Positions 17,108 to 35,498 of a stretch of DNA of 64,000 bases are shown piece after piece. A model generated the notes under the pieces. The model worked only from the letters and a program-made list of their open reading frames with translations, was not told the DNA's origin and searched no databases. Positions within the stretch are counted from its first letter, which is position 1; the number at the start of each line of letters is the position of its first letter. The position numbers and the translations under genes were made by a program. This DNA comes from Ramazzottius varieornatus (Eukaryota; Animalia; Tardigrada). The stretch lies in the NCBI GenBank assembly GCA_001949185.1, contig BDGG01000014.1, positions 1 through 64,000 of the forward strand, read 5' to 3'.

Positions 17108-20100
17108 ATGGGGTACAGTGAGACCTTTATGGTCGGCACGGAGCTAGCTCCCCGCCAGACTTGGCTGACCAAGTACAAATGGGTCTGGATCGGCCTGTTC
17201 GCCATCGGGTGGGCTCTGGCCATCCTTTTCCTTGTTCTGGGTTTGACTGGCGTTCTCCATCCCGATCCCACACCGGTCGTAACAACGCCCGGTTCGTTGA
17301 GCAGCGGCAGCACGCAGCCAACAAGCCCAGCTCCTGACGTTACCACTCCTCCAGCCAGTCCGCCCACGTCATCCGTTCCCACCAGCGCTACTTCAGGTAC
17401 TACACGAACCGGTCCGACCTCGACTGCGCGCAGCGTTGGAACGACCAGTCCTGCCACTGGACAACCTCTACCCACAACAACTCTACCACCATTGCCAACA
17501 GCCGGCCCATTGCCCGAAGACGTTGAGTCCAGAGTAGAATGCCTGCCGGATGAGCCCGATGTTTCTCAGGCCGAATGCGAGAGCAAAGGATGCGAGGTCT
17601 ACACAGACCCCAACACCGCAGTTTCAAAGTGTATTTTGGATAACGCCAGGGCGGGCTTCTCATGGAGCTGGAACAATACCTCAGGCTCCGTCAAGGAGCT
17701 CTATCTGCAATCGAAGAGGAATGACAGCCAGCAGCTCTACTCGCGGCCCTTCGTCGCACCACGAGTCAAGCTGGACTACGGAGCCAAGTCTATGTTTCAC
17801 TTTACGGTAAAGTCGGTTTGTAACTACAGAAGGGTATAGTTTACAACGGTATGTGGTGTGTTTTTGCAGATTTACGACGGTGCAAACGAGCGTTACGAAG
17901 TTCCTGTGCCTACAAAGTTACAGAAGTACGCCGAGATGGAGATAGCAGAGGAGGTGTTATACGAAAATCTCTTCCTGGGCGAAGACGCGACGGATATTCG
18001 AGTCATGCGTCACTCCGATCGGACTTTAGTGTACGAGTTGATTTCTTTGTGATGATTACTGAAACATCCAAGCTTGGGCGGCGAGAGGTTAACGGATGTC
18101 TTTTCAGTTGGGATATGAGTCTTGGTGGATTGGTTCTCGAGGATCAGTATCTACAAATTACGAACCGACTGTCCTCCGAAGATTGCTACGGCTTTGGTGA
18201 GCTGTGATGGGTTTACGTGCGTCACACTGTTATAACGCGTTTTCCTCTTGGACAGGCGACAACCGACATCCACACTTGAAGCACAACTTCGATGGTCGAA
18301 CCTGGCCCATGTTTTCCCGCGACGAGCCTCCAACCAACCCAAACACCACAGCCAACCTTTACGGTGTCCATCCCTTCTACATGTGCATGGAACCCAGCGG
18401 CAACGCCCACGGAGTCTTTCTTCTCAACAGCAACGCCATGGGTACGTTTTCTGAAAAGTGTACTGCAATTAGCAGGAGAATATACAGTATTAATACAAGC
18501 CGTATTATCTCAGAGTACAAATTCCACAACGGTTCAACACCTGCATTGACCATTCGTTCCATCGGTGGTATCTTTGACTTTTATATCTTCATGGGACCGA
18601 CACCTGAAGATGTCATCGAGCAGTACACCAGGGTATGCACCTTATGATTCGCCTTTATCTCAGCCGCCTAACGTAGCACATGCTTTTGTTTTTTATAGCT
18701 GATGGGCCGTCCGTTCATGCCACCTTACTGGGCTTTGGGCTTTCAAATCAGCCGTTGGGGATTCACCGACCTGGACGACGTGAAGAGAACCGTGAACCGC
18801 AGCTTGGAGGCCAAAATTCCACTGGACGTTGTGTATGGCGACATTGACTACATGGCATACGCGCAAGACTTCACCATCGATCAAGAGAACTATGCTGAAC
18901 TACCGGTCTACGTTGATGAGCTGCATCAAAAAGGCATGCGATACGTCATCATCTTGGTGAGCTTGAATATTAGAGCTTACGGTGCCTGGTGACAGTTTGC
19001 ATCCATTAGCTGCATGGTTTATTCAACAGGACCCGTTCATCCACGCCGATGCGGCGATAAAGCACCCACAACTGCCAGAATATCGGCCCTACACCGATGG
19101 TGTCCAGCGCGACGTCTTTCTCAAATGGCCAGCTAACATCACGGCGGGCAACGACGGCATTGTGGCTGAATCGATTGGGCCGAACAAGATCATACTGGGC
19201 AAAGCTTGGCCACAGGGTCGATCGGCATACCCAGATTTCTTTAAGAACGAGACGGCGGCCTGGTGGACAGATTGGATCGCAGACGTTTACAACACCCAAG
19301 CCCTCAAATTTGATGGCATATGGCTGGAGTAAGACCCGTGAAAACCTTCTGTGCTGACACAAAACCGAAGTGCTTTTGTCCTTTAGCATGAATGAACCAA
19401 CGTCTTGGGGCACCAACAAGAACGTTTCCACTGTTTTCTACTGCGCCGGCCTAGCAAGCAGTTTCGTCAACCACACATGCCATACTTTACAATGCCCGAT
19501 GAGTAGCCCGCTTGAAAACCCTCCTTACAAGCCCAGTAAGAGAAGAGATTGACTCCATTCAACTCTCGCTCTAAAGGTTGTCTGTTTTTTCCAGTGGCGG
19601 TCAGAGCATGGGGATCAGCCGCAACCTTGGCCGACGGAACCCTCTGCATGACGGCCCAAGGTCGAGGAAAAGACGGTAAAATGTACAACCAGTATGATGT
19701 CCACAGTCTGTACGGGTGGAGCCAAGCCGAAGTCACCTACAAGTAAGTAGTGTCTTATGCCTACAAATTTAGGCGCGATACTCGCGTCTTGTTGAAACGG
19801 TGGTCCCAACTGTTCATGTTGCAGAGCCGCCCAAACTCTTCGGAACCAACGATCCTTTGTGTTTTCGCGTTCAACATACCCCGGGGGTGGACAGTACTTA
19901 GGCCACTGGTTGGGTGACAACGCGGCCAACTTTGAAGACATGCGCTACTCCATCATCGGCATGTTGGAGTACAGCATGTTTGGCTACTCCTACATCGGCG
20001 CCGACATCTGTGGCTTCTGGGACGACACCAAGGCCGAACTGTGTACTAAATGGCACGCCTTAGGTGCATTCTACCCTTTCGCACGAAACCACAACGCGCG

Positions 20101-35100: not shown

Positions 35101-35498
35101 CTGTCAGATGTTTCACCTTTTGTGCTTACTTTGAAGGGCATCGTTACTATCGAAGCCGCCAATGGCGACGGTCCATGGGGCGAGAGCGTGCCACGGATCG
35201 ACGTCATTTTGATTGCTGGTTTCCCTGACGTGCCCGACATGACCTACATCGAATACATCCCCGTCACCGGAAACTCCACCTTCCTGGACATCAATTCAAC
35301 GCTTTATCATGACCGAGTCAACCACGTAAGTTTAGCCCGTCGCATATCAGGATGTAAGTAACACGGCTTGTCCCACAGGTTCTGAGGATCCGTGGAGCCA
35401 ACCTACCTGTGCACCGATCTGCCACGGTCATCTTCCGAAACTATGGTGAACCTAACCCTACCCCGATGCCCACCATTCCACCGCCATCGGACGAATAG
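17108..35498 (+). CDS. Type II membrane GH31 alpha-glucosidase (sucrase-isomaltase/maltase-glucoamylase-like) with four tandem trefoil-like + GH31 modules; roughly 55-60 introns, estimated 3800-4000 aa
   Basis: N-terminal TM ([22 protein letters not shown]) and Thr/Ser/Pro stalk. Modules at ~17520-21270, ~21290-26660, ~26750-31340, ~31340-35498, each with NLYGxHP, GxPFxPPxWALGFQxSR, GDxDY, nucleophile motif (spliced WLDMNE, WIDMNE, WIDMNE, WIDMNE), HWx[21 protein letters not shown]. Exon 26586-27038 reads from module 2 into module 3 without a stop. Stop TAG at 35496-35498. Confidence 0.9.
23225..23305. repeat. Palindromic element family, copy F (GH31 intron 23179-23368)
   Basis: CATGTGGCGCAC-N25-GCGTGCCACTTG; the spacer is the reverse complement of the copy C/E spacer consensus. 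Confidence 0.7.
24835..25036. mobile_element. Degenerate MITE in a GH31 intron
   Basis: Imperfect ~45-bp inverted arms (TACACGCATGAAGAAAAATTATGGCTAGTACAAATTATGGGCCA / TGGCCCGTGGTTTCTACTGGCCCAAAGTTTCTCTTTGTGCGCGTG). The homologous module-4 intron (34719-34780) lacks it. Confidence 0.6.
25228..26115. mobile_element. Foldback-like insertion in GH31 intron 25197-26167
   Basis: Left part has degenerate CCCGAAGAACTT-like subunits; right part has the complementary AAGTTCTTCGGG-like subunits. The intron is ~970 nt versus 86 nt for its module-4 homolog. Ends approximate. Confidence 0.55.
27705..27873. mobile_element. Tc1/mariner-type MITE (169 bp), TA target duplication
   Basis: TA|CAGTCGACGGCAAATTTAACCGTTAAAAATGGG ... 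CCCATTTTTAACGGTTTATTTTGTCGTACACTG|TA. Confidence 0.85.
27887..28484. mobile_element. Tc1/mariner-type MITE (598 bp), TA target duplication
   Basis: TA|CAGCCCGTTCAAGCAAAGTTGTCACCAC ... GTGGTGGACAAGTTTGTTTGAACGGGCTG|TA. Confidence 0.88.

What the first reader, a model, noticed from the sequence alone, without database searches (positions are those of the whole stretch)
17108..35498. Four-catalytic-domain membrane GH31 glucosidase (A-B-A'-B')
Seen: one TM anchor and stalk followed by four trefoil-like + GH31 modules. After hand-splicing all four keep the nucleophile Asp (WLDMNEPTSW, WIDMNEPAAF, WIDMNEVSSF, WIDMNEPANF) and the acid/base Asp (HWLGDN, HWTGDN, HWLGDN, HWLGDN). Known: vertebrate sucrase-isomaltase and canonical maltase-glucoamylase have two modules per chain, and in vertebrates SI and MGAM together supply four active sites. 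Inference: this animal builds a four-active-site brush-border-type enzyme as a single ~3900-aa chain by duplicating a two-module unit. Residues after the nucleophile differ in each module, hinting at divided substrate preferences.
Basis: partly seen in the sequence, partly recalled or inferred. Interest (0 to 1): 0.85.

Follow-up and report, generated by a model that had tools for sequence, protein, structure and literature searches.

The report
Tardigrade four-module GH31 alpha-glucosidase gene
This is one already-annotated gene of the tardigrade Ramazzottius varieornatus that appears to encode a membrane-anchored, starch-sugar-cutting enzyme with four intact active sites on one 4025-residue chain, made by doubling a two-site unit; chains with three to five such sites are already annotated in mice, molluscs and sea squirts.

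Summary
Window 17108-35498 (+) carries one 60-exon gene, with every intron GT-AG. Its product is identical to the public record "hypothetical protein RvY_16599 [Ramazzottius varieornatus]", 4025 aa.

- **Architecture:** one N-terminal membrane anchor and a Ser/Thr/Pro stalk are followed by four trefoil-like + GH31 modules (A-B-A'-B').
- **Junction:** exon 30 (26586-27038) runs in frame from the end of B, through a piece of duplicated stalk, into the trefoil of A'. There is no stop, no second anchor and no signal peptide.
- **Age and selection:** the halves are 74% identical in protein and 73% in DNA. dN/dS is 0.11, with synonymous sites saturated. This is an old duplication with both halves under selection, not an assembly artefact.
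- **Hypsibius exemplaris:** its public models show the same B-to-A' read-through. Its halves group with each other, not with those of Ramazzottius.

- **Novelty:** the gene model is public, and chains with 3-5 GH31 modules are widely annotated (mouse Mgam isoform 1 has four).
- **Single chain:** that reading rests on the open frame and on gene models.

The scan had not noted this enzyme on other DNA.

The parts
17108..35498 (+). Whole coding span of the gene (public model RvY_16599): 60 exons, 4025 codons, TAG stop at 35496-35498
   Evidence: Exact exon-by-exon mapping of P0217, all introns GT-AG
17108..17251 (+). Short cytosolic tail and the only membrane-spanning segment (aa 1-48)
   Evidence: The hydropathy maximum of 2.6 is at aa 28-46; the next best segment scores 1.29
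17252..17512 (+). Ser/Thr/Pro-rich stalk (aa 49-135)
   Evidence: 63% of residues are S, T or P
17513..21258 (+). Module A (aa 136-1092). Nucleophile Asp604 has its codon split across 19327/19387. Acid/base Asp734 is at 19916-19918. Trp611, at 19406-19408, is unusual.
   Evidence: Module envelopes; conserved columns; coordinates; motif census
21268..26657 (+). Module B (aa 1096-2062). Nucleophile Asp1577 is at 23169-23171 and acid/base Asp1698 at 23796-23798.
26586..27038 (+). Chimeric exon 30. It holds the last B residues, a 30-residue linker copied from the end of the stalk (26658-26747), and the trefoil of A'. This is the duplication junction.
   Evidence: Translations and alignment with the B' end and with exon 1; exon map
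26748..31311 (+). Module A' (aa 2093-3049). Nucleophile Asp2561 has its codon split across 29344/29426. Acid/base Asp2691 is at 29968-29970.
31321..35495 (+). Module B' (aa 3053-4025). Nucleophile Asp3525 is at 33284-33286 and acid/base Asp3646 at 33803-33805.

Best explanation
This is one gene of Ramazzottius varieornatus. It encodes a type II membrane-anchored alpha-glucosidase of the maltase-glucoamylase / sucrase-isomaltase kind, with four complete and probably active GH31 modules in the order A-B-A'-B'.

It arose when a stretch of about 9.2 kb was duplicated in tandem inside the gene. That stretch ran from the end of the stalk in exon 1 to a point 12 codons before the old stop. The join is in frame, so the second A-B unit hangs on the first through about 30 residues of copied stalk.

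Inferred, not shown: the chain is made whole, sits on a gut cell surface, and releases glucose from maltose-type and related alpha-glucosides at four sites. Module A may have a changed +1 subsite.
For: - **Exact map:** the public 4025-aa protein maps exactly to 60 GT-AG exons.
- **Open junction:** the frame stays open across the junction even if introns 28 and 29 are kept.
- **No second start:** there is no second hydrophobic segment anywhere in the chain. No + frame of 25197-26600 holds a hydrophobic stretch.
- **Selection:** the halves are 74% identical in protein, with dN/dS 0.11 and pS 0.66 over 1943 codons.
- **Catalytic kit:** each module keeps 101-109 of the 118 columns that are near-invariant in 55 modules of other animals. 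These include both catalytic Asp residues.
- **Solved relatives:** human maltase-glucoamylase matches at E = 0, and its subunits and sucrase-isomaltase at about 1e-197 to 1e-185.
- **Second species:** a Hypsibius exemplaris model (P0291) also reads from a B module into an A module in frame.
- **Transcribed relatives:** 8.5-9 kb Logan contigs encode uninterrupted three-module scallop proteins, so chains with more than two modules are transcribed in invertebrates.
Against: - No transcript or protein evidence for the junction was obtained here.
- The public model comes from a pipeline that merged RNA-seq-based and ab initio predictions (PMC5034306). It is not proof of a full-length mRNA.
- The Hypsibius models are partial and imperfect.
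- Cleavage after synthesis, as happens in sucrase-isomaltase (my own knowledge), could yield smaller mature pieces.
- Enzyme activity and tissue are untested.
Confidence: 0.8

Rival explanations
1. The locus gives mainly two-module products, either from two transcription units or from alternative splicing or alternative ends. In that case the four-module chain would be a prediction artefact or a minor isoform.
For: No RNA evidence could be obtained. Mouse Mgam has annotated isoforms with three and with four modules. The authors of the genome paper themselves mention artificial fusions of neighbouring coding sequences as a hazard of their RNA-seq-based models.
Against: After correct splicing, module B has no stop. 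A'B' has no start codon followed by a signal or anchor: the first Met in frame lies inside the trefoil, at aa 2120. No hydrophobic exon candidate lies upstream. A'B' is under strong purifying selection, so it must be made in a form that enters the secretory path. Hypsibius keeps the same open junction.
Confidence: 0.12
2. One or more of the four modules is a non-catalytic binding module, so the chain has fewer than four working sites.
For: Module B has Thr in HWTGDN, and 17 of its 118 conserved columns are changed. Module A has Trp611 in place of a Phe found in 60 of 63 modules. Human MGAM2 is reported to have lost its catalytic residues (PMC6451114).
Against: Both catalytic Asp residues and the surrounding motifs are intact in all four modules.
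Confidence: 0.06
3. The second half is an assembly artefact or a decaying copy.
For: It is a tandem repeat in a draft assembly. Four short tracts are nearly identical between the halves.
Against: The halves are only 73% identical in DNA and their introns differ. Transposon-like inserts lie in different introns of each half. All 30 exons of the second half are intact, with dN/dS 0.11.
Confidence: 0.02

Closest known systems
Mouse and rat maltase-glucoamylase long isoforms (e.g. NP_001355804.1, 3616 aa; P0158, P0001)
   Same: One anchored chain with four trefoil + GH31 modules, each with the WIDMNE motif.
   Different: They were built as A-B-B-B by repeating the C-terminal module alone. They are about 37% identical to the tardigrade chain. 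The rodent C-type modules examined carry a 21-residue insert that all tardigrade modules lack.
Human maltase-glucoamylase and sucrase-isomaltase (PDB 9kz6, 3ton, 2qly, 3lpo)
   Same: Same family, domain order and catalytic motifs. Matches are E = 0 to 1e-185. The anchor-plus-stalk layout is also the same (from my own knowledge of these enzymes).
   Different: They have two modules per chain. The tardigrade A/B split is not clearly orthologous to the vertebrate N/C split.
Hypsibius exemplaris models P0015 (1423 aa) and P0291 (2315 aa, partial)
   Same: Together they give anchor-stalk-A-B... and ...B-A'-B', with an in-frame B-to-A' junction.
   Different: The halves are 90-97% identical, against 73-75% in Ramazzottius. 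The junction keeps about 7 stalk residues, against about 30. The halves group by species.
Three-module chains of molluscs, Owenia, Ciona and amphibians; five-module chains of Haliotis asinina, echidna and a lizard
   Same: Tandem trefoil + GH31 modules in one predicted chain. The scallop form is backed by transcript-length contigs.
   Different: Where placed on the tree, they grew by repeating single modules, and some repeats are nearly identical. They did not grow by doubling a two-module unit.

Membership tests
Glycoside hydrolase family 31 | GH31 TIM-barrel catalytic domain with its C-terminal beta-sandwich domain | tested here: met
   PF01055 4 stretches, E = 0; PF21365 4 stretches, E = 1.8e-80
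Glycoside hydrolase family 31 | Nucleophile Asp in the W-x-D-M-N-E motif and acid/base Asp in the H-W-x-G-D-N motif | tested here: met
   Present in all four modules
Maltase-glucoamylase / sucrase-isomaltase type (membrane-bound, multi-module) | Trefoil (P-type) domain in front of each catalytic unit | tested here: inconclusive
   Pfam Trefoil sits at threshold on the exons of A and A' (21.2 and 20.8 bits, cut-off 21) and scores 35.9 bits on the whole protein. Three conserved Cys columns are present in all four modules. B and B' do not pass Pfam on their own.
Maltase-glucoamylase / sucrase-isomaltase type (membrane-bound, multi-module) | N-terminal uncleaved signal-anchor followed by a Ser/Thr-rich stalk | tested here: met
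   Single hydrophobic segment at aa 24-48; the stalk is 63% S/T/P. Topology itself is inferred.
Maltase-glucoamylase / sucrase-isomaltase type (membrane-bound, multi-module) | Several catalytic modules translated as one polypeptide | not testable with these tools
Maltase-glucoamylase / sucrase-isomaltase type (membrane-bound, multi-module) | Exo-alpha-glucosidase activity on maltose-type substrates | not testable with these tools
   Needs an enzyme assay
Vertebrate C-terminal (glucoamylase / sucrase) subunit type | 21-residue insert after the V-W-P motif | tested here: not met
   Absent from all four tardigrade modules and from the other invertebrate modules shown. The role of this insert is from my own knowledge.

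The most novel reading that the evidence does not exclude
Ramazzottius and Hypsibius each doubled the same two-module unit on their own. Each join was in frame and had breakpoints in the same two tolerant places, the C-terminal tail and the stalk. That would be a repeated, selected route to a tethered four-site alpha-glucosidase in tardigrades. Supporting this, the halves group by species, the AU test rejects A-with-A orthology at p = 1.6e-5, the junction lengths differ, and divergence is 73-75% against 90-97%. The alternative is one old duplication homogenised by gene conversion, and short conversion tracts are visible in Ramazzottius.
Probability: 0.45. Interest if true: 0.4.

Novelty: new member of a known kind. 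Interest (0 to 1): 0.3.

Why it matters
It adds a clean, old and well-preserved case to the set of animal GH31 enzymes that carry more than two active sites on one chain. It differs from the others in how it was built: a whole two-module unit was doubled and the breakpoint is preserved in one exon. The second pair has had time to diverge, so the gene could serve as a natural test of whether tethered active sites split their substrates. It also shows that two-module chains of this kind are not confined to vertebrates, contrary to PMC6451114. It is not a new kind of enzyme, and the gene model is already public.

Tried and rejected
- **RNA evidence.** I stopped there, so read laying could not be used.
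- **Junction search.** A protein search with the junction frame found nothing of 176-560 aa.
- **Expression table.** The expression table of the genome paper is not held.
- **Literature.** Searches for the locus tag, for tardigrade alpha-glucosidases and for multi-GH31 chains found no paper on this gene.
- **Rejected readings.**
  - Assembly artefact: the halves are only 73% identical.
  - A hidden anchor exon in front of A'.
  - Orthology of Ramazzottius A with Hypsibius A.
  - Equivalence of module B with the vertebrate glucoamylase-type subunit.
- **Joined model.** Exons were searched by reference. Whole-chain searches used the public protein id P0217. The exons were joined only inside scripts, by coordinates, for local statistics.

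Full report
**What is there.**
- The region is a compact, intron-rich animal gene on the + strand.
- Pfam scans of single open frames, sent by reference, gave the GH31 barrel, its C-terminal domain and trefoil matches.
- The assembly has 55,842,812 bases in 200 contigs, and the window is the start of contig 14.
- A search with a scallop relative returned "hypothetical protein RvY_16599 [Ramazzottius varieornatus]", 4025 aa (P0217). This protein maps without any mismatch to 60 exons from 17108 to 35495, followed by TAG. Every intron is GT-AG, and most are 53-90 nt long.
The genome paper states that its models merge RNA-seq-based and ab initio predictions (PMC5034306).

**Architecture.**
- P0217 has 4 stretches of PF01055 and 4 of PF21365. 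It matches human maltase-glucoamylase at E = 0, and its subunits and sucrase-isomaltase at about 1e-197 to 1e-185.
- I compared the four modules with 55 modules from other animals. Of the 118 columns that are near-invariant in those, the four tardigrade modules keep 108, 101, 109 and 107. These include both catalytic Asp residues, the conserved Arg and His, and three trefoil Cys.
- There is one transmembrane-like segment, at about aa 24-48, followed by a stalk that is 63% Ser/Thr/Pro. No other hydrophobic segment comes close.

**The junction.**
- Exon 30 (26586-27038) begins with the last residues of module B. These align with the last exon of B' up to a point 12 codons before the B' stop.
- The exon then continues with about 30 residues that align with the end of the exon-1 stalk, and runs into the trefoil of A'.
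- The frame is open from 26118 to 27080 even without splicing.
- No + frame between 25197 and 26600 holds a hydrophobic stretch that could serve as a separate anchor or signal for A'. The first in-frame Met after the junction lies inside the trefoil.
- Exon sizes in the two halves are nearly the same throughout. One exon of the first half (472 nt) is split by an extra intron in the second half.

**Age and selection.**
- The halves are 65-78% identical in DNA by BLAST, 72.8% over aligned codons, and 73.6% in protein by BLASTP, 74% over aligned codons.
- Over 1943 aligned codons pS is 0.66 and pN is 0.16, which gives dN/dS of about 0.11. The figures are alike for A/A' and B/B'.
- This rules out an assembly artefact. 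It also shows that both halves have stayed under purifying selection.
- Since A'B' has no start, anchor or signal of its own, the simplest reading is that it is made as part of the long chain.
- Four short tracts with exact runs of 68-138 nt stand out against this background. They look like gene conversion between the halves.

**Relatives.**
- A scan of 1.84 billion representative proteins with one exon, and two word-based searches, show that chains with more than two GH31 modules are common in annotations:
  - four modules in mouse (including the RefSeq record NP_001355804.1), rat and other rodents, and in Styela;
  - five modules in Haliotis asinina, echidna and a lizard;
  - three modules in many molluscs, Owenia, Ciona, Acanthaster and amphibians.
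- The scallop three-module protein comes from 8.5-9 kb Logan contigs with an uninterrupted frame, so these are transcripts.
- On a tree of 63 modules, those chains grew by repeating single modules: mouse is A-B-B-B and Styela is A-A-A-B. In Ramazzottius, A pairs with A' and B with B', which means a two-module unit was doubled.

**Other tardigrades.**
- In Hypsibius exemplaris, P0015 is anchor-stalk-A-start of B. P0291 (partial) is end of B-A'-B', with an in-frame junction. Its halves are 90-97% identical.
- On a careful tree, the halves of each species are sisters at 100/100. The AU test rejects a clade of Ramazzottius A with Hypsibius A (p = 1.6e-5). Sites that could show old orthology split 1 against 2.
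- The Hypsibius junction keeps about 7 stalk residues, against about 30 in Ramazzottius.
- This fits either two independent duplications or one old duplication with concerted evolution. I cannot decide between them.
- Paramacrobiotus has a low-quality three-module model, A-A-B.

**Function.**
- From the family, each module should be an exo-acting alpha-glucosidase. This is inference.
Module A has Trp611 where 60 of 63 modules have Phe. Module A' keeps the motif also seen in Hypsibius and Paramacrobiotus.
- The 21-residue insert of the rodent C-terminal modules I compared is absent from all tardigrade modules. The tardigrade A/B split is not clearly the vertebrate N/C split.

**Limits.**
- No transcript, protein or activity evidence was obtained. 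No paper on this gene was found.
Whole-chain searches used the public protein id. Exons were joined by coordinates only inside scripts.

**Verdict.** The four-site single chain is the best reading, at about 0.8. Novelty is modest.

Noticed in passing
window 18274-18625 / 27495-28653; 19900-20100 / 29950-30150; 23430-23590 / 33440-33590; 26250-26480 / 35064-35290: Short tracts are 95-100% identical between the two halves, with exact runs of 68-138 nt, in a background of 73% identity. They look like gene conversion between the halves. One tract covers the acid/base motif of A and A'.
   Followed up: partly
window 25197-26166 (intron 27) and 27663-28541 (intron 33): The two unusually long introns hold dispersed repeats. 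Their counterparts in the other half are 86 and 72 nt. Intron 33 carries an element of about 175 nt with inverted ends, found in 30 or more copies at 90-94% identity, and an element of about 600 nt found in 12 or more copies. Intron 27 matches about a dozen places in the genome at 68-83% identity.
   Followed up: partly
window 21836-22307 versus 31860-32044 + 32109-32377: One exon of the first half corresponds to two exons in the second half, so an intron was gained or lost since the duplication.
   Followed up: no
window 19406-19408 (Trp611 of module A): This is the only Trp at a position that is Phe in 60 of 63 GH31 modules compared. It lies six residues after the nucleophile. Module A' keeps the motif also seen in Hypsibius and Paramacrobiotus.
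   Followed up: partly
window 4533-7247 (+); 37543-39320 (+): A 904-aa open frame carries endonuclease and reverse-transcriptase domains, so it is a non-LTR retrotransposon. A weaker reverse-transcriptase remnant lies downstream of the gene.
   Followed up: no
window 11332-14238 (+) and 14787-16358 (+): Large leucine-rich-repeat open frames lie just upstream. A 523-aa open frame has no Pfam match above threshold.
   Followed up: no
literature, PMC6451114: The paper says that two-site GH31 glucosidases arose in vertebrates. The searches here list two-module chains in lobster, shrimp, tardigrades, Lingula, Lineus and starfish.
   Followed up: partly
G000 contigs C13:555778-557385, C1:2859235-2860601, C8:1019562-1021337, C3:4111957-4113508, C1:5350801-5351699: There are further GH31 loci in the same genome. 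They appear to be single-module and were not examined.
   Followed up: no
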